IMG/VR virus record: IMGVR_UViG_3300029908_000004
Coordinates: 1-64,000 of that record
Length of the DNA stretch: 64,000 nt
Direction: 5' to 3' (one strand)
Shown: positions 3,005-58,687 of the stretch, in pieces
Layout of the letters: every line of letters begins with the position of its first letter
Numbering within the stretch: the stretch's first letter is position 1
Notes under the pieces: generated by a model
Databases searched by the model: none
What the model saw: the letters and a program-made list of their open reading frames with translations, nothing else
Told to the model about the DNA's origin: nothing
Program-made: the position numbers and the translations under genes

Positions 3005-3454
3005 CTATTCTTCACCCTTTGCTCCATTTGGATCTTCTGTGTCATCCTCGTACAAATCACTAGAGTTAGTGTTATCGTCATTGTTCTCAGCGAGTTGACG
3101 ACCAAGGAGTTCTTGCTGTGCCCTCATGTTATTACGTAGTAACCTCTCAGTAAATCCTTCGAAAGTAATAACACCATTGTTATCTTTGTATGGGATCCAA
3201 ACACGATCACCAGCAATTTGTGTGAAATGAGTAGCTGCAGCCATAAGTAGTTGCAATTCAGCGATTTGTGCGTTGCCCCTACGAATCTGAGCCTGACTAA
3301 CTGCTTTACCAGCTTCACGTTCTGCTGTTACAGCATCAGTCTTTGCTGCTTCTAGATTTAGGAATAGCTGTTCGATTTCCTGTTGTGCCTCTGGTGATAG
3401 TTCATTAATTCTAATCTTTGTGGTTCGAAATGCTTTGCGGAATTGGTTTCCCAT
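3005..3454 (-). CDS. Hypothetical coiled-coil protein between the polymerase halves
   Basis: 149-aa ORF with SD (AGGAG), an alanine/glutamate-rich helix and an acidic tail. Confidence 0.75.
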   Translation of the reverse strand: MGNQFRKAFRTTKIRINELSPEAQQEIEQLFLNLEAAKTDAVTAEREAGKAVSQAQIRRGNAQIAELQLLMAAATHFTQIAGDRVWIPYKDNNGVITFEGFTERLLRNNMRAQQELLGRQLAENNDDNTNSSDLYEDDTEDPNGAKGEE

Positions 3455-7509: not shown

Positions 7510-10032
7510 TTACTTACATTTAGAGTAACCACACAACACACTACATTCTGTGCAGCCTGATATAAATCTTAGCTGTGCCCCACAATCAGGGCATTTAGGT
7601 GTATGTTTTGTTATATTTTCATCTTTGATAGCTGCTAGCTTTGTCTCAATAACAAATGGTATATTGGAAATCTTTGAGGCGAAGTATGGTGCTGCCTTCT
7701 CAAAGATGACTTCATCTATTAGCTGAACGGCAGAAGTAAAACACTTACCGTTATACCATAAAGCAGACTGCCCACCAACTCTTCTTAGTTGTTGGCGTAT
7801 CTCTTTGGAAGACACATTGGATCTAAGCAATAAACTTATTAATCTACCTGCTAATTCTATCCATTCATTACCAGCGTTCTCACGTAGAAATACTTCTATT
7901 ACTCTACCCTCAATCTGATGATTAACGGTTACGTATAGCTTACCATCTCTACCATCTGGGATAACATAAGTTCCCCCATCTAGGAAATCTGGACGCTCAA
8001 TAACTTCTTTCTCTTGTATCGGTTTTAGTACTGTTTTAAGAGATGTGGGCTTCTTCTCTTCTCTTATTAGTACACCTTCACGACATCCGTCTCTGTATAC
8101 AGTTATTCCTTTTAGCTTAAGCTTGAATGCTAGGTTATATACATAAGCAACGTCCTCTACTGTGGACGTAGTTGGCATATTAACTGTTTTGGATATAGCG
8201 TTATCACAATACTTCTGAAATGCAGCTTGCATTCTAACGTGTTGTTCAGGGGTTACTTGACTAGCATCTACAAAATAACTAGGAAGTTTATCTTCTTTGT
8301 GTTCAGCTAACCAAGCTTCTGCCCTTGAATCATAGTACTCTCTTACACCAATTGTATCCTGTCTAGTATATTTAAAAGCAAATATAGGCTCTATACCAGA
8401 AGAACATTCATCTATAAGAGAAATAGTCCCTGTTGGGGCTATAACAGTAACGTGACAGTTTCTAACTCCATGCTTTTTGTACAACGAGTATAAGGTTTGG
8501 TTTTGAGTAATATAACGATGAGCAGGATGACAATTTATATCCTTAGATAATTGTCCCATCTTATTATCAAAGAATTCTACATTATTCTCTAGCTCTGGAA
8601 AGGGTCCAAACTCCTTGGAAAGCATAGTAGATTCAATCCAAGCGTAGTATTGTATCCACTGTCCTATCCTTTCACCCACTTCATATGATTCATCACTACC
8701 ATAAGCGATATGTAAATCTAATAGTAAATCTGCTACTCCCATTACACCTAAACCAATAGGTCTAGAAGCTTTGGTAGTGTCAGTTATCTCTTGGATAGGA
8801 TATTCGTTTTTCTCTATAACCGCATCTAGGAATCTAGCGGCCTTACGGGCTGTAATTGCTAATCTCTTCCAGTCTACATAGTTATACCAAGCATCTGATT
8901 TATCAGATGCTTTAGCTGTAAAGAATTTACTTACATTAATAGAACCAAGATTGCAAGAATTGTGATCTACTTGATAGTATTCCCCACACGGATTGGAATT
9001 ATGTATAGGTCCTAAAGACTTGACTGGGTTATCATCGTTGACAATATCATCAAACATAATTCCGGGTTCGGCAGAGGACCATGCTGATTCTAATATCCTC
9101 TGCCATAACAGCTTAGCTCTAACATATTTGATACCATCCTTCTCGACAACGATGTTAGCGTCATTGCGAGGATCCAGAACTGGACCTCTCCAGGGCTCAT
9201 AGCGTACTTGTTTTGCCCGTGGACCATTCTCCGGGTCATCTACAATAGCTCGGCGCAACATAAAGAGTCCATCTTCTTCAAGTACTTTCATGAACTCATT
9301 AGTTACTTTAACAGAGATATTGAAACCAGAGAATGGGGAATGCCAAGTATCTTGCTGAACACTGTTTCCATGGTCGGTGACGTCAAGCCAACCGACATCC
9401 TGCGCTACCTGGCGAGCTTGCTCTAGGCTCAGACCGTACTGGTTTAGCAGGGTGTTCAACAACCAAGGCCCAGTCTTGACTTTGCAATCTATAAAAGCCA
9501 AGATTTCAGGGTGCCAGACAGCTAACATCCACATCATAGCGATGCGCCTTCTGCCTCCCTGAACAATCGCTTCGCTCATAGCCTGAAATGGACCCATGAA
9601 GCTTATAACACCTGAAGCGATTCCACCTGAATTAGTTAACGCACCATATGGTCGGATTTGAGACCCGTCCATGCCAATACCACCACCAGTCTTCCCAATA
9701 ATGGCACCGTCTTGAATTGCTTTGAAGATACCTGGTATATCATCTGGTACATGGAGGATATAACAAGCAGATAAAGACTTCTTACTTACATAAGGATTCC
9801 CAGCATTAAACCATGTTGGGGAATTAGGAGAAAACTCCTGATTATACATTAGTCTGAAGAAAGATTCTTCTAGACCCTGTGGTTCCCCTGATGGATAAGC
9901 GCTGGAAATATCTTTTGCTACACGACGACAACAATGCTCCCATTCCGTCTCGATTTTATTGCCTTGTGGATCACGGAGATAGTAGCGTTCACTTAACACC
10001 TTTTCGGTGTTAGGTTTTAAAACTCTTCCCAT
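7510..10032 (-). CDS. nrdJ: Class II (adenosylcobalamin-dependent) ribonucleotide reductase with C-terminal TSCPD/zinc-ribbon domain
   Basis: PNSPTWFNAG, SACYIL, SNPCGE, CNLGSIN, RPIGLGVMG, IAPTGTIS, DNAISKTVN, LKGITVYRDG, terminal CPDCG...CSVLCGYSKC; no NrdB nearby. Confidence 0.92.
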   Translation of the reverse strand: MGRVLKPNTEKVLSERYYLRDPQGNKIETEWEHCCRRVAKDISSAYPSGEPQGLEESFFRLMYNQEFSPNSPTWFNAGNPYVSKKSLSACYILHVPDDIPGIFKAIQDGAIIGKTGGGIGMDGSQIRPYGALTNSGGIASGVISFMGPFQAMSEAIVQGGRRRIAMMWMLAVWHPEILAFIDCKVKTGPWLLNTLLNQYGLSLEQARQVAQDVGWLDVTDHGNSVQQDTWHSPFSGFNISVKVTNEFMKVLEEDGLFMLRRAIVDDPENGPRAKQVRYEPWRGPVLDPRNDANIVVEKDGIKYVRAKLLWQRILESAWSSAEPGIMFDDIVNDDNPVKSLGPIHNSNPCGEYYQVDHNSCNLGSINVSKFFTAKASDKSDAWYNYVDWKRLAITARKAARFLDAVIEKNEYPIQEITDTTKASRPIGLGVMGVADLLLDLHIAYGSDESYEVGERIGQWIQYYAWIESTMLSKEFGPFPELENNVEFFDNKMGQLSKDINCHPAHRYITQNQTLYSLYKKHGVRNCHVTVIAPTGTISLIDECSSGIEPIFAFKYTRQDTIGVREYYDSRAEAWLAEHKEDKLPSYFVDASQVTPEQHVRMQAAFQKYCDNAISKTVNMPTTSTVEDVAYVYNLAFKLKLKGITVYRDGCREGVLIREEKKPTSLKTVLKPIQEKEVIERPDFLDGGTYVIPDGRDGKLYVTVNHQIEGRVIEVFLRENAGNEWIELAGRLISLLLRSNVSSKEIRQQLRRVGGQSALWYNGKCFTSAVQLIDEVIFEKAAPYFASKISNIPFVIETKLAAIKDENITKHTPKCPDCGAQLRFISGCTECSVLCGYSKCK

Positions 10033-10282: not shown

Positions 10283-11335
10283 TTACACTTTGGTTCCGGC
10301 ATTCTCGGAGTCTTCCTTTTTAGCAGCAACTATCATAGAACATATTTTGTAGATACTAGCTGCTGTGGAAGACAACGTTAAGCCGTCTTCCCATGATTGA
10401 TATAAAGATAGTTCATGGATAGCATTAGCGCATCTCATAGCGCGTTTACCATCTGATTGGAGTAGTAACCATTTAAATCTATTAGCTAATACAGAACGAA
10501 TAGCTTTACCATCCCCTGTATTAGCTTTGTTTAGGATACCACGAGTCTTTATCCAATCACCAGTTACAACTGCTTGCCATAGTTCAGAGACATTAACACC
10601 AATAAGATCAACAGGTTGAGCAGCTTCTTCTGGACTAGCACCAGCTAAACACTTCTCCATAGCCATCACAGCTAACCCCGGGCTAGTTATACCATTAGCT
10701 TTGAGAGCTATTATTAGCTTATCAGAGACTTTGTCTGGTAACATAGGTTGATTAGCTGCTGCCAAATGTAGATTAACACAGGTTACCAATTCTGCTAGTC
10801 CGTCTTCATTGACCCCCGGCAGAACAAAAGTTAGACATCTCCGCTTTATCGCTGGTAATAACTTGGCAGGATTCGTGGTACAAAGTATCCATATAGTATT
10901 ACTGGATTCCTCTTCAAATGACTTCAACAACACAGTTTGAGCTGGTTCAGTCGTTTTATGAACTTCATCTAGTATAATTATCCTGTGATCACCTTCTAAG
11001 GGGTATCTCCCAGCTAAGCTAACCAATGCCCTAGCATCATCTATACCATTGTTATCTGGTACATTTTGTTCGGTGATACTAAATGAGTTCTCATCATATT
11101 TTTTTATACATTCTATACAAGGCTCACCAAACTCTTTTACATGTTTACATTGTAAAGATACAGCTATGATCCTAGCTATAGTGGTTTTCCCAGAGCCCGG
11201 CTCTCCAATGAAAAGCCAGACTTTGGGGATTCTACCATTGGCTATTTGATTACGAATTTGATCTGTTATACCACGCGTGCCAACCATCATGTCTAAACGT
11301 TTAGGTCGACACGTTATACTAAGATTTTGGTCCAC
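10283..11335 (-). CDS. dnaX: DnaX (gamma/tau)-like clamp loader AAA+ subunit
   Basis: GEPGSGKTT Walker A, C..PCIECI zinc motif, IIILDEVH Walker B, CTTNPAKLLPAIKRRC. Confidence 0.88.
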   Translation of the reverse strand: MDQNLSITCRPKRLDMMVGTRGITDQIRNQIANGRIPKVWLFIGEPGSGKTTIARIIAVSLQCKHVKEFGEPCIECIKKYDENSFSITEQNVPDNNGIDDARALVSLAGRYPLEGDHRIIILDEVHKTTEPAQTVLLKSFEEESSNTIWILCTTNPAKLLPAIKRRCLTFVLPGVNEDGLAELVTCVNLHLAAANQPMLPDKVSDKLIIALKANGITSPGLAVMAMEKCLAGASPEEAAQPVDLIGVNVSELWQAVVTGDWIKTRGILNKANTGDGKAIRSVLANRFKWLLLQSDGKRAMRCANAIHELSLYQSWEDGLTLSSTAASIYKICSMIVAAKKEDSENAGTKV

Positions 11336-12973: not shown

Positions 12974-13870
12974 TTATTTGTCTAACCTCAAACGATTAAA
13001 TACAGGAAATCTCATGGATTTATCTTCTGTTATTTCCTGAAACTTTACTTCAAATATTTGATCGATTAGCTTGCCTTCTTTATACATTTTCCAGAAGGTT
13101 TCCCTCTGGGTGTCATCAAAACCAGTGCCACATTCGGAGATAACGTGGTAAGATTTGTCATTCCACTCTACATCCCCTTCAAGTAGAACCTTGCCTAACC
13201 TTCCTACATGCTTACCATTACCCTCATAGGCTTCAGTAACAAATAAATCAGCGTCTGTCCATGGCTTAATCTTTAACCAATATGGGGAGCGTCTGCCTAG
13301 TTCATAAGGTCCGTCAGGATCCTTAACCATTCCACCTTCATAGCCCTTCTCTAACAAGTGAACGTACTCTTCTTGTATCTGAGCATAAGATGTAACTATT
13401 TGGTGTTCAACAAGTATCACACCATTAGGGTTAGCAGAACTCAAAGCATTTTCTAGCTTAGCATATCTATCTCGTAGTGGGGCATCTGTCCCACACAACT
13501 GGCCATGTACTAGGGGTACCATATCAAAGATATTAAACCTAATGTTAGCAGCGTCAGGATGTGGTTCTCTCTGTCTCTTCAGAATAGACATGGATTTATT
13601 CCAATTCTCACTGAAGAATTCACCATCGAGGAAATGATTAGCAAACTGTTTGCGAGTAAGTTGTTCTAGTATATGATCAATGTTCCAGAATGGCTTACCA
13701 TTACGGCTAAATCCAACTGCCTTACCTTTATTATCTACGATAACACCACGTAAACCATCTAGTTTTGGTTCCAACCACCATGGCTTGGTAATTTTAAATC
13801 TCTTTGGATTCAGTGTCTTAGCTAGCTGTGGATTTATAAGGAAAGAATGTTCTGGAGTTGTATCGCTCAT
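12974..13870 (-). CDS. lig: ATP-dependent DNA ligase
   Basis: EPKLDGLR adenylation motif, LDGEF, FDMV, EGGMVK, WLKIKP, ECGTGF, RFPVFNRLRLDK. Confidence 0.95.
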   Translation of the reverse strand: MSDTTPEHSFLINPQLAKTLNPKRFKITKPWWLEPKLDGLRGVIVDNKGKAVGFSRNGKPFWNIDHILEQLTRKQFANHFLDGEFFSENWNKSMSILKRQREPHPDAANIRFNIFDMVPLVHGQLCGTDAPLRDRYAKLENALSSANPNGVILVEHQIVTSYAQIQEEYVHLLEKGYEGGMVKDPDGPYELGRRSPYWLKIKPWTDADLFVTEAYEGNGKHVGRLGKVLLEGDVEWNDKSYHVISECGTGFDDTQRETFWKMYKEGKLIDQIFEVKFQEITEDKSMRFPVFNRLRLDK

Positions 13871-25803: not shown

Positions 25804-26124
25804 TTATAATGCTATAGTACCTGTACGGAAGGCATCCTGAGGTAAACCTTGTGCCTTTGCTCTACCTTCTTCAGCTACACCATCGTTAGGTGGTGGTGCT
25901 AATTGGAAGGAATTCCTAATCGTTTCTACTAACCCCGGTAGATCTTCAGCAGCTTGATCAACGAAAGATTGTGCTGCTTGATAATCAGATGCGTTTATAG
26001 CTATTACTGACCCATCTGAAGTATGAATACGTAGTTCAATGGCATCTCCTGATACCTTTGTTATAGTCGCTGTAACAATACAATGAAACTTTCCATTGTT
26101 TAACACTAAGTTAATAGTCTGCAT
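25804..26124 (-). CDS. Hypothetical protein
   Basis: 106-aa ORF with SD. Confidence 0.6.
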   Translation of the reverse strand: MQTINLVLNNGKFHCIVTATITKVSGDAIELRIHTSDGSVIAINASDYQAAQSFVDQAAEDLPGLVETIRNSFQLAPPPNDGVAEEGRAKAQGLPQDAFRTGTIAL

Positions 26125-26144
26125 TTTATCCTTTGTTTAATTTG

Positions 26145-26347
26145 TGGTGCTCACGGCGAGATTCGAACTCGCGACCCACACATTAGATTGTGTGTCTAAG
26201 TAGCTATAACGCGCTTTCCTACACATTTCAGTGATAGGAGTTAATCCTATCTCGGTTACGATGTACCTTTCGGGGCCTCCGCAACTCACTACCTATGACG
26301 AGCTTCCTAAGTTTGCTCCGCTCTTTCCATTCTAAGCTATCGTGAAC
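26145..26347 (-). ncRNA. 203-nt tRNA-like RNA: acceptor, D and T arms intact, anticodon region replaced by a long insertion
   Basis: GTTCACG/CGTGAGC-A-CCA acceptor; GCTT..GAGC D arm; GCGAG-TTCGAAT-CTCGC T arm. Confidence 0.7.
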
Positions 26348-26353
26348 AATATT

Positions 26354-26404
26354 TGGTACCGACGACGGGGATCGAACCTGCAACGGCTTTCGCCTCAACT
26401 GATT
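26354..26404 (-). pseudogene. Orphan 3' half of a type II tRNA (Leu-like)
   Basis: Variable arm GGCGAAAGCC, degenerate T arm, CGTCGGT-A-CCA; abuts the CCA of tRNA-Leu(TAG). Confidence 0.7.
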
Positions 26405-26481
26405 TGGTCCGGGAGGTCGGACTTGAACCGACAGAATCGAGTTCCTAAGACTCGCACGTTTGCCAATTACGTCACCCCCGG
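26405..26481 (-). tRNA. tRNA-Leu(TAG) with a short variable loop
   Basis: CGAGT-CT TAG GA-ACTCG; 5-nt variable region; CCGGGGG/CTCCCGG-A-CCA. Confidence 0.85.
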
Positions 26482-26508
26482 TTATTGGTTTCTATAGCAT
26501 GGCAATTT

Positions 26509-26733
26509 TTAGTTAGGTTTAGAGTATAGAAAAACTTGTTCGTTGTTCGGATTACCAAGGTTCATTAAACCATTCTGTATATTTCTCCCCAAGTCATTGG
26601 CTTCTTGGTCCGAATCGGTAGCCCATATCTTATGGGCCCATTCACCCTTACCTAATACTACCAGATGAACTTCATTCTTCAATAACTTTGTTAATTCATT
26701 ATTATTGGTATACTTGATGTGTCTAATAGACAT
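26509..26733 (-). CDS. Hypothetical protein
   Basis: 74 aa; its SD AGGAGG overlaps the anticodon loop of the tRNA 5' fragment just upstream. Confidence 0.6.
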   Translation of the reverse strand: MSIRHIKYTNNNELTKLLKNEVHLVVLGKGEWAHKIWATDSDQEANDLGRNIQNGLMNLGNPNNEQVFLYSKPN

Positions 26734-26983: not shown

Positions 26984-27366
26984 CTAGAAGTATTCTATTT
27001 TTATATTCTCTTGGGACATCATCTGGTCTACCTTCTTCCAGATTTCTTCATCAGTCATTTCTATGATAACATTACTTTGACCTAGTCTACGTGCTACTTC
27101 TATTTTATGCCAAGCTTTGAACGCAGAGGTATTAACACACTTAACGAACGCCTGTTCTTTGTTCTTGGCTTGGTCTCTACCATCTCTATGCTCAGCTGTT
27201 GCTCCAGAATCAATGTGGATACACCTTACACCATTCTGTTTGGCGTTTCTGTGAATATAGGTCTCCCGACCTAATGCTGACCGCCGTTACCGCCCGTGCA
27301 GAAAGTCTCAAAGGTAAAATCCTTGCGAGTGAGAGTAAATAATAGGTGCTTTTCTTTTTTAGACAT
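26984..27366 (-). CDS. GGQ peptide-release-factor-like protein (RF-1 domain, ArfB-like), interrupted by a 20-nt coding gap
   Basis: Frame 1, 27366-27274: MSKKEKHLLFTLTRKDFTFETFCTGGNGGQH then TAG. Frame 2 resumes at CAC 27253: HRNAKQNGVRCIHIDSGATAEHRDGRDQAKNKEQAF...IKIEYF*. The joined product would be 119 aa. Confidence 0.85.
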
Positions 27367-27949
27367 CTTGATTCCCCTTCTTGTGTTTAGCTAGGTAAGC
27401 AATGGCTTCTTCTAGGAGATGCTCATCTTCATTCAATAAACCTATGGCTGTGTTGCATTTGCTACATAGTAATCCTCTATGCTTCCCAGAGGAGTGGCAG
27501 TGATCCAGAGACAATCTAATCAATTTACCTTGTCTTGTCTTTGTTTCTTTCTCTTTACAGATAGCACACTTGCCTTCCTGTGCTTCATGAAGGTTATTAT
27601 ATTCCTGCCTTGTGACTCCGTACTTAGTTTTCAAGCAACTATTATAAGACTGCTCATATATCTTATCTTTGTTCTTGTGTCTGTTTCTAGTTGTTATCAG
27701 TCCTGTAGACTTGCTCCAGCAGGTTTTACAGATATGCCTTTTTCCTAATCTATCCCTCCGGTCGTAAAATTCACCTGATGTTTTATCAAGCTTGCATTTA
27801 GTACATATTCTTCCGGTTGGAGTTTCCAGTATAGATTTCTGGTATAGATTAAAGCAATTAGTAGAACAGAATGATTTACGGTTTGGTTTTATTTGACTGG
27901 GCTTCTTGGGGTGTACTTTCGTACAGTAGGTACATATTACATTCATCAT
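27359..27949 (-). mobile_element. Endonuclease VII-like HNH homing endonuclease gene (HEG3)
   Basis: LKTKYGVTRQEYNNLHEAQEGKCAIC...LSLDHCHSSGKHRGLLCSKCNTAIG; N-terminal zinc fingers. Confidence 0.9.
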
Positions 27950-31141: not shown

Positions 31142-31218
31142 TGGGAGCCCTAGTAGGATTCGAACCTACCTAATCCATCTACAGTAAACTGTTTAGGAAA
31201 CAGTGCTGGTATAGGGCC
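31142..31218 (-). tRNA. D-armless tRNA-Arg(CCT)-like RNA with a long variable region
   Basis: GGCCCTA/TAGGGCT acceptor; only TACCAGC before ACTGT-TT CCT AA-ACAGT; canonical T arm; CCA. Confidence 0.65.
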
Positions 31219-33862: not shown

Positions 33863-33889
33863 TGGCTCCGACTTAGGGATTCGAACCCC
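33863..33889 (-). pseudogene. Orphan tRNA 3' end (Gln-like)
   Basis: GGGGTTCGAATCCCTAAGTCGGAGCCA. Confidence 0.65.
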
Positions 33890-33900
33890 AATAAACAGCT

Positions 33901-33986
33901 TGGCTGGGAAGGAGGGACTCGAACCCACACGTCTTTCGACACTGGTTCCAAAGACCAGCGCGTCTAATCCATTTCGCCACTTCCCA
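33901..33986 (-). tRNA. tRNA-Gln(TTG) with a long variable arm
   Basis: CTGGT-CT TTG GA-ACCAG; U1-A72, G73; variable arm TGTCGAAAGACG. Confidence 0.85.
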
Positions 33987-39127: not shown

Positions 39128-39156
39128 TGGCGGTAGAGAGGAGAGTCGAACTCCTA
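39128..39156 (-). pseudogene. Orphan tRNA 3' end (Ser-like, G73)
   Basis: TTAGGAGTTCGACTCTCCTCTCTACCGCCA, just downstream of tRNA-Ser(TGA). Confidence 0.6.
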
Positions 39157-39181
39157 AGTCCGGTTAGGGTACTATAGTTTA

Positions 39182-40936: not shown

Positions 40937-40966
40937 TGGAGCTATCGAAGAGTCTCGAACTCTTGA
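40937..40966 (-). pseudogene. Degenerate tRNA 3' part
   Basis: AAGAG-TTCGAGA-CTCTT-CGATAGC-T-CCA with no matching 5' acceptor or D arm. Confidence 0.5.
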
Positions 40967-41006
40967 GTTTTATTTGTAGATTAAAATTGTAGCTGAACTC
41001 CCTCAA

Positions 41007-41488: not shown

Positions 41489-42154
41489 ATGATAACCCTA
41501 AGTATGGAACAATTTACCAAACTAAATAGTCGCTCACCAGTAGAATGTAAATGTGAACAATGTAACAGTCTTTTCTACAGAGTAAAACATGATTTACAGA
41601 CAGCTATTCGTAGGAAAGAACCAATATCATTTTGTTCGCCGAAGTGTTATGGTTTATACAGAAACACTAAGACTACTGTCAAATGTTTATGGTGTAAGTC
41701 TGAAGTAGTTAGAATACCAACTACTAAGAATGTCTTCTGTTCGAGATCGTGTTCTGCAAAATATAATAACACACATAAAACATTTGGGACTAGAAGATCG
41801 AAACTTGAGAGATTTCTAGAAGAACAAATAAAATTATCGTACCCCAATTTGGAGCTTATATGCAATAGCAAATCAGTCATCGGTTCAGAGTTAGATTTCT
41901 ATTTCCCGAGGCTCAGATTGGCGATAGAACTCAATGGTATTCTGCACTACGAACCAATCTATGGGACAGATAAATTCTCTAAAATTGTTGACAATGATAG
42001 ACAAAAAGTTAGATTATGTGAAGCTATGGGTATTGAGCTAGCAGTTATTAATTCTTCGTCATGTTCACGCATGAGCGCAGTATTTAAAACTAAGTATTTG
42101 GGGATAACACGTGAATTAATAGACTCTGTTATTGATAGAGGAAATTTGGGGTAG
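41489..42154 (+). mobile_element. Antisense PD-(D/E)XK/Vsr-like homing endonuclease gene with zinc fingers (HEG4)
   Basis: ELDFYFPRLRLAIELNGILHY; CSPKC/CSRSC repeats; TTGACA-18nt-TATACT promoter at 41449-41478. Confidence 0.8.
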
Positions 42155-42221
42155 ATAGAGAGGTTCAAACTCTCGCTAAGGGAGCCACAGACCCTCGTGC
42201 TTTCATTACACTATACCTACC
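42147..42221 (-). tRNA. tRNA-His(GTG), replacement copy
   Basis: G-1:C73; AGGGT-CT GTG GC-TCCCT; CCA. Confidence 0.88.
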
Positions 42222-46604: not shown

Positions 46605-46689
46605 TGGAGCGAGAGACGGGATTTGAACCCGCATGTCTTTCAACGGTAGCTTGGAAGGCTACTGACCAACCGAGTAGGTCATCTCCCGC
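46605..46689 (-). tRNA. tRNA-Gly(TCC) with a long variable arm
   Basis: GTAGC-CT TCC AA-GCTAC; variable region CGTTGAAAGACAT; U73; CCA. Confidence 0.82.
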
Positions 46690-48929: not shown

Positions 48930-49260
48930 AGGTAGACCCTAACCCGGTTAATCAACTAAGAAGATTAACAATACGCTGGGGCAGAAACACTGGCTAGGCT
49001 GGAAATCATCCAGGCTGGCAGAGTGTCGATACCAACAGCGTTTACGTTAACAGTTTTGCCTGTTATTGTTGTATAGTCGTTTAACGTGAGCCTATAGCAC
49101 GACCTGTCATTATTTGCAATTCATACCAAGCGAACCCGGGAGCGGCCCCTATGGTGGACACTCGGGATTCAACCTCCGTGCCCTTATAATTGGTGGACCG
49201 CGAGGGAGTTGAACCCTCGTTAATGGTCATGCTTACAAATAAATCATACAGGTTTAACCG
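48930..49260 (-). ncRNA. ssrA: Circularly permuted two-piece tmRNA
   Basis: The acceptor piece (49260-49191: T arm GAGGG-TTCAACT-CCCTC, GCGGTCC-A-CCA) precedes the coding piece starting GGGCCGC at 49148 (G3:U70). Helix 2 TTGCAAATAA/TTATTTGTAA; pk1-like element; AATAACA-GGC resume context; tag ORF 49060-48965. Confidence 0.85.
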
Positions 49261-56986: not shown

Positions 56987-58687
56987 TTACTCCGCTTCTG
57001 CTTCTTCAGTTTCCAATACTTCCGTTTTCCCTGAAACGAATTGGGCAATCAACGAAGGCACATTGGTATCGAATCCAACCACGTCCAACGAACGTACATC
57101 GTTTGGATCTGCGATCGAGAATCCAGTTGCTGTCATCCCGATGACAATCTGATGAGCGTTACGTCCAGAACTCTGACGATAGCTCTCCAAAGCGCTAAAT
57201 ACGTGTTTAGGTCCTGCCCAAGTCTCGTTGTCAGTGATGTTGACAAACACATCGACTGGCATCTTCTTTTCTTGTGCATCCTTATATGGAAGTGAACAAT
57301 CTGTTCCTCCCCACCCTGTGCGTAGTGCCTTGGATATTGCTGCGTCTAGCTTCATGGATTTAACCAATCCAACATCAATCATCTTGGTGTTGTAGGAAGC
57401 AACGTGATGCCATGGCTCATTATGCATGATTACCATAGCCATTGCTACTGCACCCATGATTGGTGACATGTTTGGACAACCAACAAGATTTCCCCATCCC
57501 ATTGAGCCGGAACAATCCAAGCCAATGTAATAGTTCAAATTGGTGGTTTCAGCATTCTTAAACGTCTTATAGAACGCTGCGTCCATAGCATCCAAAACTG
57601 GTTTCACCACTGTCCAAGTCAACGAGCCACGAATGCCATGACCAGTTTGATAGGTTAACATAGCATTCAGAACAGTTAGTGGGTGAACACGACTACGTTG
57701 CAGATATTCCTGATCCGACAGACGTGTTACTACTAGCTTTGACGCCTCTGATAGAGGAGCTAACAGCTTGATGCTACTCATCTTACCAAGGTTCCTGATC
57801 ATTGCGTTCATGGGCATTTTCTGAAGCAATGCCTCCCAAACTGCAACGTGGTTCAATGCCTCTGTAGGGATCATTTCGCGAGTGAGGTTGTACTTCTGAA
57901 TCGCTGAAATGATTACCTTTGGGTCTTTTTCATTCTTCATTGCCTCGAACTGCTTAATCAGTTCTGGCAAGTCCTTCTCTAAATCGGTTGCTCCGTGCAG
58001 ACCTTTGGTAGCCCAATCAAACAAGGCTTTCTGCCCATTCGACAACGTAGCATGGGTACCTGCATGGGTGGCACGAAGGATGTCGCGATGGCTCCATCCT
58101 TGTGTTCCATCCACACGCCGTGATTGGTATTTCACCATCTGATAAGCCAGTTTCTGCTCATCTTTCTGTGTGTACCAATCTGCTACGCCGTTGCGTAGTG
58201 ACCTATTCCAACGCATCTTTGCGGCACCTTCGGCCTGTTTTGACCGCATGCCTTTCAGATATTCCATTAGTTGGAACAAATGCGTTCCGATACGTGCTAC
58301 GTCTGGCAGTTTATCCAAGGCGTAACCACGAGTGGATTTGTCACCGAATGCTATACACTGTGCCAACGCGAACAGGGCATAGTCATTCTTTGGAGCCCGG
58401 CCAGATACAGAGATATCGACAATCGTTTTTACTGTCTTCTCTCCATCTGCCGAAATACAGCGTTCAACGCACTTTGCGTTGTCACGCGTCAACTTGTCGG
58501 CACCAACATAATAAGTGCCACCTTCGCTTCCAAGAATTATAAATCTCTGGAGTCGGTCCCAGTCACTCAGTTCAAAAACATAACCTCCAGCGTTATTCTG
58601 AACTTGATTCTTTTCTGGGAATGGTTCACTTTGAGGAATTGTTGGCTTCATCGCCCCATACACATTTGTTAGGTTGGGTTTCTTCAT
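56987..58687 (-). CDS. rsr: Ro60/Rsr TROVE-domain RNA-binding protein with a vWA domain
   Basis: QVQNNAGGYVF...DRLQRFIILGSEGGTYY...KYQSR..GWSHRDILRATH...MIRNLGKMS...SRVHPL...LDCSGSM...GGTDCSLP...TDNETW...VVGFDTNVP. Confidence 0.96.
   Translation of the reverse strand: MKKPNLTNVYGAMKPTIPQSEPFPEKNQVQNNAGGYVFELSDWDRLQRFIILGSEGGTYYVGADKLTRDNAKCVERCISADGEKTVKTIVDISVSGRAPKNDYALFALAQCIAFGDKSTRGYALDKLPDVARIGTHLFQLMEYLKGMRSKQAEGAAKMRWNRSLRNGVADWYTQKDEQKLAYQMVKYQSRRVDGTQGWSHRDILRATHAGTHATLSNGQKALFDWATKGLHGATDLEKDLPELIKQFEAMKNEKDPKVIISAIQKYNLTREMIPTEALNHVAVWEALLQKMPMNAMIRNLGKMSSIKLLAPLSEASKLVVTRLSDQEYLQRSRVHPLTVLNAMLTYQTGHGIRGSLTWTVVKPVLDAMDAAFYKTFKNAETTNLNYYIGLDCSGSMGWGNLVGCPNMSPIMGAVAMAMVIMHNEPWHHVASYNTKMIDVGLVKSMKLDAAISKALRTGWGGTDCSLPYKDAQEKKMPVDVFVNITDNETWAGPKHVFSALESYRQSSGRNAHQIVIGMTATGFSIADPNDVRSLDVVGFDTNVPSLIAQFVSGKTEVLETEEAEAE

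What the first reader, a model, noticed from the sequence alone, without database searches (positions are those of the whole stretch)
26145..26347. 203-nt tRNA-shaped RNA with the anticodon arm replaced by a structured insertion
Seen: acceptor, D and T arms and CCA are intact, but about 130 extra nt lie in between. These include a GAGC/GCTC hairpin whose loop contains CTTAGGA, a GATAGGA/TCCTATC hairpin, and a possible pseudoknot TTAGA-CACAC-AA-TCTAA-T-GTGTG. There is no G3:U70 and no resume motif, so it is not a tmRNA, and it looks too short and lacks core motifs for a group I intron. Inference: a new tRNA-scaffolded ncRNA or a tRNA with a protein-spliced intron.
Basis: partly seen in the sequence, partly recalled or inferred. 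Interest (0 to 1): 0.62.

Follow-up and report, generated by a model that had tools for sequence, protein, structure and literature searches.

The report
tRNA-framed structured RNA in a jumbo phage
A 215-kb peat phage carries a 203-nt RNA gene with an intact tRNA frame (acceptor, D arm, T arm, CCA) but a well-folded 106-nt four-way-junction domain where the anticodon region should be. It appears unspliced in an RNA library and is most likely a tRNA-scaffolded non-coding RNA, not a decoding tRNA.

Summary
On the minus strand, 26347→26145 has a 7/7 acceptor stem, a D arm with GG, a canonical T arm (UUCGAAU loop), a GGGUC variable loop and an encoded ACCA. It lies inside a same-strand array of 31 tRNAs. 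About 125 extra nt sit between the D and T arms: hairpin A (loop contains CUUAGGA), a closed 106-nt domain (10-bp helix plus three hairpins; z = -3.1) and hairpin B.

It is not a standard tRNA, tmRNA or group I intron. The genome encodes no RtcB, splicing endonuclease or SmpB. All 20 amino acids are already covered, and the code is standard. One metatranscriptome contig covers 26150-26534 colinearly, with no joint and with an adapter 5 nt from the predicted 3' end.

My best reading (about 0.5) is a stable, unspliced tRNA-scaffolded ncRNA. The main rival is a transcribed relic of tRNA-gene rearrangement.

No homologue exists outside this one clonal phage, so covariation cannot be tested and the function is inferred.

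The context is notable. The phage encodes Ro60 and at least 10 Y-RNA-like genes, three of them of the YrlA tRNA-mimic type. X203 lacks their signature.

The parts
26145..26347 (-). X203, the whole 203-nt tRNA-shaped RNA gene
   Evidence: ARAGORN with the intron option calls exactly this span. MFE fold z = -3.09. Identical in at least 10 assemblies.
26341..26347 (-). Acceptor 5' strand GUUCACG (pos 1-7), followed by a 3-nt connector AUA
   Evidence: Pairs 7/7 with pos 193-199; base-pair probability 1.00.
26320..26337 (-). D arm (pos 11-28): 4-bp stem and a 10-nt loop with A14, G15 and G18G19 equivalents
   Evidence: Base-pair probability 0.83.
26300..26318 (-). Hairpin A (pos 30-48): 4-bp GAGC/GCUC stem. 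Its 11-nt loop contains CUUAGGA, the same 7 letters as the anticodon loop of the neighbouring tRNA(UAG).
   Evidence: Base-pair probability 0.95.
26194..26299 (-). 106-nt insert domain (pos 49-154). A 10-bp closing helix with one bulged A leads to a four-way junction with only two unpaired A residues.
   Evidence: Folded alone: -34.3 kcal/mol, z = -3.13, 1 of 200 shuffles as stable; the centroid is nearly the same as the MFE.
26253..26288 (-). Insert arm 1 (pos 60-95), ending in a C-GAAA-G tetraloop
   Evidence: Base-pair probability 0.98.
26233..26251 (-). Insert arm 2 (pos 97-115): GAUAGGA-UUAAC-UCCUAUC
   Evidence: Base-pair probability 0.99.
26204..26231 (-). Insert arm 3 (pos 117-144)
   Evidence: Base-pair probability 0.98.
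26178..26193 (-). Hairpin B (pos 155-170): ACACA/UGUGU stem with loop AUCUAA. It lies where a V arm or the 3' side of an anticodon arm would be.
   Evidence: Base-pair probability 0.83.
26173..26177 (-). Variable-loop equivalent GGGUC (pos 171-175). C175 can form a Levitt pair with G15.
   Evidence: Read from the sequence. The same GGGUC precedes the T arm in the YrlA-type unit at 37197-37051.
26156..26172 (-). T arm GCGAG-UUCGAAU-CUCGC (pos 176-192)
   Evidence: Base-pair probability 0.93.
26145..26155 (-). Acceptor 3' strand CGUGAGC, discriminator A and encoded CCA (pos 193-203)
   Evidence: An RNA-library contig ends with an adapter at 26150.
26350..26404 (-). Upstream 55-nt orphan element: GGC-GAAA-GCC hairpin, T-arm-like GCAGG-UUCGAUC-CCCGU, CGUCGGU and ACCA, ending 6 nt before X203
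   Evidence: It is co-covered with X203 by the RNA contig 26150-26534.

Best explanation
X203 is a stable, unspliced, non-decoding tRNA-mimic RNA, in effect a natural 'tRNA scaffold'.

Shown:
- It has a complete tRNA frame: a 7-bp acceptor, a D arm and T arm that retain the elbow-forming nucleotides, a G15:C48-type pair, and an encoded ACCA.
- A compact 106-nt four-way-junction domain, flanked by two small hairpins, emerges where the anticodon stem would be.

Inferred mechanism:
- It is transcribed with the neighbouring tRNA(UAG) as part of the long minus-strand tRNA operon.
- RNase P cuts at G1, and 3' trimming stops at the encoded CCA.
- The tRNA fold protects the RNA from exonucleases. This is the role proposed for the tRNA-like module of bacterial YrlA and exploited in engineered tRNA scaffolds.
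- The 106-nt domain is the working part, a platform for a protein or RNA partner that is still unknown.
- The tRNA frame may also let it engage tRNA-handling proteins as a mimic or decoy. Candidates are the phage's own CCA-adding enzyme, host modification enzymes and tRNA-targeting defence nucleases.
- It does not decode codons.
For: - The frame and insert are real and strongly folded.
- The Rfam tRNA model and default ARAGORN both reject it as a tRNA.
- No splice gives a uniquely canonical anticodon arm.
- tRNAs for all 20 amino acids exist elsewhere in the genome, so a further decoder is not needed.
- The code is standard.
- Metatranscriptome run X20 has a 408-nt contig colinear with 26150-26534, without a joint. 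An Illumina adapter abuts 26150, 5 nt from the predicted 3' end. Run X21's contig stops at 26345, 2 nt inside the predicted 5' end.
- No splicing enzymes are encoded.
- The same genome invests heavily in tRNA-mimic ncRNAs. It encodes Ro60, at least 10 Y-RNA-like units of which three are YrlA-type with T arm, acceptor-like hairpin and D arm, and a CCA-adding enzyme.
- Another Ro60 phage (L055) carries native-topology tRNA-shaped RNAs with 45-75 nt in place of the anticodon arm.
Against: - There is no homologue outside one clonal phage population. Hence there is no covariation and no evidence of selection on the insert.
- The RNA evidence is Logan contigs from one or two libraries. These cannot exclude DNA carry-over, a precursor, or a rarer spliced form.
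- No partner protein has been identified.
- Orphan tRNA 3'-half elements nearby show that this region has been rearranged, so X203 could be a by-product of that.
- The 3-nt acceptor-to-D connector is non-canonical.
Confidence: 0.5

Rival explanations
1. X203 is a transcribed relic: a former tRNA gene that took up foreign or duplicated sequence during recombination or homing-endonuclease-driven rearrangement of the tRNA island. It is still made and processed because the tRNA frame survives, but it has no function of its own.
For: - The island holds at least 5 orphan 'T arm + acceptor 3' strand + NCCA' pieces. One lies 6 nt upstream of X203.
- An Endonuclease VII-type gene lies 1 kb away.
- X203 has two half-placed anticodon-arm-like hairpins, as if two tRNA halves had been joined.
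- Hairpin A's loop copies that of the adjacent tRNA(UAG).
- The RNA has no relatives.
Against: - The acceptor strands still match 7/7, and all elbow nucleotides are intact.
- The insert folds far better than shuffles (z = -3.13), into a tight junction with well-defined helices. That is not expected of random filler.
- No other copy of the insert exists in the genome, so it is not a repeat or MITE.
Confidence: 0.27
2. X203 is an intron-containing tRNA. The roughly 104-125-nt insert would be removed, by self-splicing or by proteins, to give a class II-like decoding tRNA such as ARAGORN's Tyr(AUA), with hairpin B as its variable arm.
For: - ARAGORN with the intron option gives tRNA-Tyr(ata) with intron i(35,104).
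- The proposed intron ends in G.
- The exon stretch AACUU could pair with GAGUU in the insert, giving a U.G pair at the would-be splice site (read from the sequence).
Against: - There is no Rfam group I or II match, even at E <= 10 on a 121-nt query.
- From general knowledge, the smallest natural group I introns are about 200 nt.
- The proposed anticodon stem has a C/A mismatch and a G.U pair, and A34 in the anticodon is unusual.
- ARAGORN accepts 745 of 3,192 arbitrary splice variants, with dozens of different anticodons.
- The phage has no RtcB and no splicing endonuclease.
- The RNA contig is colinear, with no joint.
- A normal tRNA-Tyr(GUA) already exists.
Confidence: 0.08
3. X203 is a miniature tmRNA-like RNA. 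In this reading the tRNA-like domain is joined by a long helix to a ring of hairpins carrying a short tag frame (pos 66-92, 8 codons then UAA), and it is charged with an amino acid other than alanine.
For: - The topology matches tmRNA: tRNA-like domain, long helix, ring of elements, T arm.
- The Rfam tmRNA model aligns to the 3' part (18.8 bits, E = 1.6e-05).
- A distant relative of the phage (G001) carries a canonical tmRNA at the end of its tRNA array.
Against: - There is no G3:U70.
- The score is far below the gathering score of 47.
- ARAGORN finds no tag.
- The putative start and stop codons are paired with each other in a stable stem.
- The tag lacks the usual hydrophobic ...AA end.
- X203 has a true D arm, unlike tmRNA.
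- The phage has no SmpB.
Confidence: 0.04

Closest known systems
YrlA-type bacterial and phage Y RNAs (Ro60/Rsr-bound tRNA mimics; Chen et al. 2014, PMC4201824; Wang et al. 2018, doi 10.1101/312249)
   Same: - Both have a tRNA-like module with T arm, D arm and acceptor-like stem, and a long helix where the anticodon stem would be.
- Both have an extra V hairpin before the T arm.
- In M. smegmatis YrlA, and in this phage's unit 37197-37051, an ACCA follows the acceptor 3' strand.
- The genome encodes Ro60 and YrlA-type units.
   Different: - X203 has the native tRNA topology, with its ends at the acceptor stem. YrlA is circularly permuted, with its ends at the Ro-binding stem.
- X203 lacks the family signature GGGUCGA...GGUUAYC...AUAUCC (nhmmer finds no hit at E <= 100).
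- X203 lies 30 kb from the Ro60 gene.
- Its long helix is closed by a three-hairpin cap.
tmRNA
   Same: Both have a tRNA-like domain with acceptor, T arm and ACCA. In both, a long helix leads to a closed ring of structured elements.
   Different: X203 has no G3:U70, no credible tag frame and no pseudoknots. It has a true D arm, is 203 nt against about 350 nt, and scores 18.8 bits against a gathering score of 47.
Engineered tRNA scaffolds (from memory: Ponchon and Dardel, a structured RNA inserted in the anticodon stem of a tRNA for stable expression)
   Same: The architecture is the same: an intact acceptor, D and T frame with a structured payload in the anticodon region. Processing by the tRNA machinery and nuclease resistance would be expected.
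   Different: Those are man-made. X203 is natural and keeps two extra small hairpins beside the payload.
Intron-containing tRNAs (bacterial group I introns in the anticodon loop; archaeal bulge-helix-bulge introns)
   Same: Both have extra sequence between the D and T arms of a tRNA gene.
   Different: X203 has no group I core, is too short, and has no canonical exon anticodon arm. The phage has no splicing enzymes, and the RNA contig is unspliced.
Native-topology tRNA-shaped RNAs beside Ro60 in IMGVR_UViG_3300028384_001071 (L055:8507-8635, 8707-8828, 9386-9481)
   Same: They have an acceptor, D arm and T arm in normal order, with 45-75 nt in place of the anticodon arm. They lie in a phage tRNA and Y-RNA array.
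   Different: Their inserts carry Y-like motifs (...GUUAUC just before the T arm) and are shorter. Covariance model R1 built from the X203 insert does not match them.

Membership tests
tRNA (RF00005 / ARAGORN) | 7-bp acceptor stem, D arm, T arm with a UUCRANY loop, and a 3' discriminator (plus CCA) | tested here: met
tRNA (RF00005 / ARAGORN) | Anticodon arm with a 5-bp stem and a 7-nt loop (U33, R37), contiguous or after removal of one intron | tested here: not met
   Hairpin A is 4 bp with an 11-nt loop. Hairpin B is 5-6 bp with an 8- or 6-nt loop. The best splice has a mismatched stem and is not unique.
tRNA (RF00005 / ARAGORN) | Detected by the family model at its threshold | tested here: not met
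   There is no RF00005 hit at gathering score or at E <= 10. Default ARAGORN is silent.
tmRNA (RF00023) | G3:U70 alanine identity pair | tested here: not met
   3:70 is U-A and 2:71 is U.G.
tmRNA (RF00023) | Resume codon and tag reading frame; family model score | tested here: not met
   ARAGORN with the tmRNA option finds none in the genome. Rfam gives 18.8 bits against a gathering score of 47.
Group I intron (RF00028) | Conserved P3-P9 catalytic core; length of about 200 nt or more | tested here: not met
   No Rfam match at E <= 10. The insert is 104-125 nt.
Group I intron (RF00028) | Spliced product present in RNA | tested here: inconclusive
   Only a colinear contig is seen. Contigs cannot exclude a rarer spliced form.
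Protein-spliced (bulge-helix-bulge) tRNA intron | A splicing endonuclease and an RtcB-type ligase are available | tested here: not met
   PF01974 and PF01139 are absent from the complete phage genome. The host's enzymes are not testable.
Phage Ro60-linked Y RNA family (this genome and at least 12 IMG/VR contigs) | Stem + GGGUCGA + N7-10 + GGUUAYC ... AUAUCC + stem | tested here: not met
   Regex and an nhmmer profile of 38 instances find all 10 units in the genome. Neither finds anything in 26100-26560, even at E <= 100.
Phage Ro60-linked Y RNA family (this genome and at least 12 IMG/VR contigs) | Ro60 gene in the same genome, with the RNA adjacent to it | tested here: inconclusive
   Ro60 lies at 56987-58687, but X203 is 30 kb away. 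Other Y-like clusters lie 6 kb and 20 kb from the gene.
Phage Ro60-linked Y RNA family (this genome and at least 12 IMG/VR contigs) | Physical binding to Ro60 | not testable with these tools
   This needs RIP or EMSA.

The most novel reading that the evidence does not exclude
X203 is the first natural 'tRNA scaffold' RNA of a new class. In this reading a phage ncRNA keeps a complete tRNA frame in native topology for RNase P and CCA processing, and for entry into tRNA-binding proteins. It displays a 106-nt four-way-junction effector domain. It works together with the phage's Ro60, Y-RNA and CCA-adding-enzyme RNA-handling module, for example as a tether or as a decoy against host tRNA-targeting defences. 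It would be distinct from both tmRNA and the permuted YrlA.
Probability: 0.25. Interest if true: 0.78.

Novelty: new variant of a known kind. Interest (0 to 1): 0.58.

Why it matters
Only a few natural RNA classes reuse the tRNA fold for something other than decoding: tmRNA, YrlA Y RNAs, viral tRNA-like structures and mascRNA. A phage RNA that keeps the whole tRNA frame in its normal topology and carries a large folded payload in the anticodon position would be the natural counterpart of the laboratory tRNA scaffold. It would also be a new route by which phages could engage or mislead the host's tRNA machinery and tRNA-directed defences.

The genome around it makes this testable. It is a 40-kb RNA island with 31 tRNAs, a Ro60 gene, at least 10 Y-RNA-like genes and several orphan tRNA-like pieces. 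The function of phage Ro60/Y-RNA systems has been open since 2014.

If X203 is only a rearrangement relic, it is still a useful warning for tRNA-intron callers.

Tried and rejected
Homologue searches that returned only the same clonal phage:
- blastn against 50,697 phage records.
- Exact 28-mer search in IMG/VR.
- Synteny searches with the downstream 106-aa ORF and with the RecD2-like helicase.
- Search of 5.8 billion proteins with two flanking ORFs.
- Ten encoding contigs, all 100% identical.
- TerL relatives are only 46-53% identical. The one complete relative (G001) has no X203-like gene and no Ro60, but does have a canonical tmRNA.
- The Ro60 protein has no close IMG/VR relative by the pattern search.
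- Covariance model R1 of the insert found nothing in 341 kb of held loci or in five whole Ro60/Y-RNA phage records.

Ideas rejected:
- Group I intron, other ribozyme or any Rfam family.
- tmRNA.
- Member of the phage's Y-RNA family.
- Repeat or MITE: the genome holds a single copy.
- Amber-suppressor or recoding reading of hairpin B's AUCUAAU loop. The genome uses the standard code, and TAG ends 38 of 151 long ORFs.
- Kissing of loops A and B: -2.0 kcal/mol, and 177 of 2000 shuffles do as well.
- A 12-nt identity of pos 54-65 (AGGUAGUGAGUU) to the 5' part of vertebrate Y1 RNA (PMC3928194). It is rare in shuffles (5 of 5000). But I noticed it post hoc, the 3' strand shows no significant match, Rfam Y_RNA does not hit, and from memory that Y1 segment is not the Ro-binding part. 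I treat it as probable chance.
- A 15/16 match to X203 pos 48-63 at 92381-92396 lies inside a 197-aa ORF, so it is chance.
- ARAGORN 'intron tRNAs' in other Ro60 phage loci are mostly artefacts of the pattern tRNA + Y unit + tRNA.
- Promoter and terminator scan: nothing above the shuffles.

One protein-family call was wasted on a reference that was too short.

Full report
WHAT IS THERE

The window is the first 64 kb of a complete 215,291-bp IMG/VR virus genome (41% GC) from peat. ARAGORN and Rfam find 31 tRNA genes, all on the minus strand between 24 and 65 kb, and all ending in an encoded CCA. They include a tRNA-His at 42147-42220 that only Rfam sees. Every amino acid is therefore served without the element under study.

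The finding (X203) reads 26347→26145 on the minus strand. Its parts are:
- Acceptor stem GUUCACG/CGUGAGC, 7 of 7 pairs.
- A 3-nt connector AUA.
- A D arm with the GG of the elbow.
- A T arm GCGAG-UUCGAAU-CUCGC, preceded by GGGUC.
- Discriminator A and CCA.

Between the D and T arms lie 147 nt instead of about 22:
- Hairpin A (pos 30-48; 4 bp; an 11-nt loop containing CUUAGGA).
- A closed 106-nt domain (pos 49-154). A 10-bp helix with one bulged A opens into a four-way junction with three hairpins.
- Hairpin B (pos 155-170).

The whole RNA folds with z = -3.09 and the 106-nt domain alone with z = -3.13. All helices have pairing probabilities of 0.83-1.0, except the three innermost pairs of the closing helix at 0.62. 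The same sequence is present, letter for letter, in at least 10 independent assemblies.

WHAT IT IS NOT

It is not a standard tRNA.
- Rfam's tRNA model does not match even at E <= 10, and default ARAGORN is silent.
- With introns allowed, ARAGORN calls tRNA-Tyr(AUA) with a 104-nt intron, but the anticodon stem has a G.U pair and a C/A mismatch.
- I spliced the sequence at 3,192 arbitrary pairs of points. ARAGORN accepted 745 of them, with dozens of anticodons, so that call carries no weight.

It is not a group I intron or any other Rfam family, and the insert is far shorter than the smallest natural group I introns.

It is not a tmRNA.
- It has no G3:U70.
- It scores 18.8 bits against a gathering score of 47, and no tag is found.
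- The only short frame (pos 66-92) has its start and stop paired in a stable stem.
- The phage has no SmpB.

Protein splicing is unsupported. The phage has no tRNA splicing endonuclease and no RtcB. Its gene content points to a bacterial host: a GH108 lysin with a peptidoglycan-binding domain, NifU, RNR and Pol III clamp-loader parts.

Hairpin B's loop AUCUAAU could be read as an amber anticodon loop. However, the genome uses the standard code, and TAG ends 38 of 151 long ORFs.

RNA EVIDENCE

The locus stands in 19 runs labelled DNA by guess and in 4 peat metatranscriptomes. The key results are:
- In RNA run X20, a 408-nt contig (depth 12) lies colinear on 26150-26534. It spans X203, the 55-nt element upstream and tRNA(UAG), with no joint.
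- An Illumina adapter abuts 26150, 5 nt from the predicted 3' end. My inference from the adapter orientation is that this fits a minus-strand RNA ending there.
- Run X21's contig covers 26345-26560 and stops 2 nt inside the predicted 5' end.
- Contigs of the downstream ORF (25905-26101) are separate.

This is what an unspliced RNA processed at tRNA-like ends would give. But contigs cannot exclude DNA carry-over, a precursor, or a minor spliced form.

No promoter or terminator stands out. The next ORF's ribosome-binding site begins about 12 nt after the CCA, so X203 is part of a long processed transcript.

CONTEXT

The window encodes a Ro60/Rsr orthologue (TROVE plus Ro60 vWA domains, 56987-58687). 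I searched for the bacterial Rsr-binding motif GNCGAA(N)G of Chen et al. (PMC4201824) and found at least 10 Y-RNA-like units on the minus strand, in three clusters: 59569-58935, 51033-50706 and 37353-37051.

Each unit has a terminal stem, then GGGUCGA, 7-10 nt, GGUUAYC, a variable apex, AUAUCC and the closing strand.

Three units are of the YrlA type, with a T arm, an acceptor-like hairpin and a D arm in the permuted order. In unit 37197-37051, the acceptor-like hairpin reads acceptor 3' strand, ACCA, spacer, acceptor 5' strand. This recalls M. smegmatis YrlA, which is cut by RNase P and carries CCA.

Rfam does not recognise these units.

The same pattern occurs on 18 other IMG/VR contigs. Seven of those loci also encode a Ro60 homologue, and most carry tRNA arrays. 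An alignment of 14 units from 10 contigs shows compensatory changes at 4 positions of the terminal stem and 3 of the inner stem.

The phage also encodes a CCA-adding-enzyme family protein and a second ligase-like protein. This phage therefore invests heavily in tRNA mimics.

IS X203 ONE OF THEM?

No, by sequence. An nhmmer profile of 38 motif instances recovers all 10 units and finds nothing in 26100-26560, even at E <= 100.

By architecture it is a cousin. It has a tRNA module, a long helix in the anticodon position, a hairpin after the D arm (as in unit 37353-37210) and a V-like hairpin before GGGUC and the T arm. The difference is that its ends are at the acceptor stem, and the long helix is capped by three hairpins instead of being open.

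Another Ro60 phage (L055) has native-topology tRNA-shaped RNAs with 45-75 nt in place of the anticodon arm. One of them (9386-9481) is a closed Y module inside a normal tRNA frame. So 'a tRNA frame with a payload' is not unique to this genome. Even so, covariance model R1 of the X203 insert matches nothing in those phages.

MOST LIKELY MECHANISM

Shown: an intact tRNA frame, a compact folded insert, no decoding-competent arm, and an unspliced form in an RNA library.

Inferred:
- RNase P and 3' trimming release a 203-nt RNA.
- The tRNA fold stabilises it.
- The 106-nt domain binds an unknown partner.
- The frame may engage tRNA-handling proteins as a mimic or decoy.

I put this at about 0.5.

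The main rival (0.27) is a transcribed relic. The island contains at least 5 orphan 'T arm + acceptor 3' strand + NCCA' pieces, one of them 6 nt upstream of X203. An Endonuclease VII-type gene lies 1 kb away. Hairpin A's loop repeats that of the neighbouring tRNA(UAG). Against the relic reading stand the perfect acceptor pairing, the preserved elbow nucleotides and the strong fold of the insert.

An intron-containing tRNA (0.08) and a mini-tmRNA (0.04) are poor fits.

LIMITS

Every search for relatives returned only the same clonal phage. No covariation test of the insert is therefore possible, and the function is inference.

The 12-nt identity to vertebrate Y1 RNA is noted, but I treat it as probable chance.

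VERDICT

X203 is a real, unusual, probably expressed tRNA-framed RNA. It is a new variant among tRNA mimics, and its function is unproven. Its setting, a phage RNA island with Ro60 and a large Y-RNA family, raises its interest and offers direct experiments.

Noticed in passing
window 56987-58687 (-): The phage encodes a 566-aa Ro60/Rsr orthologue (TROVE 1.3e-39, Ro60 vWA 2.3e-47). tRNA-Val and tRNA-Trp lie directly downstream.
   Followed up: partly
window (-): ~59569-59505, 59459-59325, 59171-59090, 59081-59010, ~59002-58935; 51033-50920, 50909-50798, 50788-50706; 37353-37210, 37197-37051: At least 10 Y-RNA-like genes in three clusters, which Rfam does not recognise. The signature is stem + GGGUCGA + N7-10 + GGUUAYC ... 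AUAUCC + stem. Three are of the YrlA type (T arm, acceptor-like hairpin, D arm). Unit 37197-37051 has ACCA in the loop of its acceptor-like hairpin. The same family occurs on 18 other IMG/VR contigs, 7 of them with a Ro60 gene in the fetched locus. Compensatory changes support both stems.
   Followed up: yes
window (-): 26350-26404, 33863-33900, 39128-39181, ~40937-40990, ~49191-49240: Orphan 'T arm + 7-nt acceptor 3' strand + NCCA' elements with no matching 5' acceptor strand. Three sit directly after a normal tRNA (Leu-UAG, Gln-UUG, Ser-UGA), and several lie just upstream of an ORF. They may be relics of tRNA rearrangement, or processing signals like plant mitochondrial t-elements.
   Followed up: partly
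window 31142-31218 (-): A 77-nt tRNA-like RNA that both detectors miss. It has a 7/7 acceptor stem, a canonical T arm and CCCA, but no D arm. A 10-bp hairpin with a 3-nt loop stands in place of the anticodon arm.
   Followed up: partly
window 33901-33986, 46605-46689, 26405-26481 (-): tRNA-Gln(UUG) and tRNA-Gly(UCC) carry extra variable-arm hairpins with GAAA loops, giving 86 and 85 nt. The tRNA with anticodon UAG, called 'Leu', has only a 5-nt variable loop, which is the class I shape.
   Followed up: no
window 42147-42220 (-): A tRNA-His (GUG anticodon, G-1:C73) is found by Rfam but missed by ARAGORN. It completes the set of 20 amino acids.
   Followed up: yes
window 27359-27949 (-): An Endonuclease VII-type (HNH-like) protein with N-terminal Cys clusters lies 1 kb upstream of X203. 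It is plausibly a free-standing homing endonuclease inside the tRNA island.
   Followed up: no
G000 73310-74821 (-) and 84489-86111 (-), outside the window: There is a CCA-adding enzyme / poly(A) polymerase family protein with an RNA-binding domain. There is also a second ATP-dependent ligase-like protein (540 aa, with a weak RNA-ligase match) besides the ordinary DNA ligase at window 12974-13870.
   Followed up: partly
L032:17139-17484 (IMGVR_UViG_3300018004_000004): A distant relative of the phage (TerL 48% identical, 215 kb) carries a canonical tmRNA (tag AEFEELPLAA) at the end of its tRNA array. It has no Ro60.
   Followed up: partly
L055:8507-8635, 8707-8828, 9386-9481; L060:~10308-10410; L061:~9470-9565: Other Ro60/Y-RNA phages carry further odd tRNA-shaped RNAs. 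Some have native-topology frames with Y-like inserts (L055). Others are 95-101-nt RNAs with a G3:U70 acceptor and a T arm but no D arm (L060, L061).
   Followed up: partly
window 26283-26294 (-), X203 pos 54-65: AGGUAGUGAGUU is identical to 12 nt of the 5' part of vertebrate Y1 RNA, as printed in PMC3928194. Only 5 of 5000 shuffles do as well, but I noticed it post hoc and the 3' strand gives no supporting match.
   Followed up: yes
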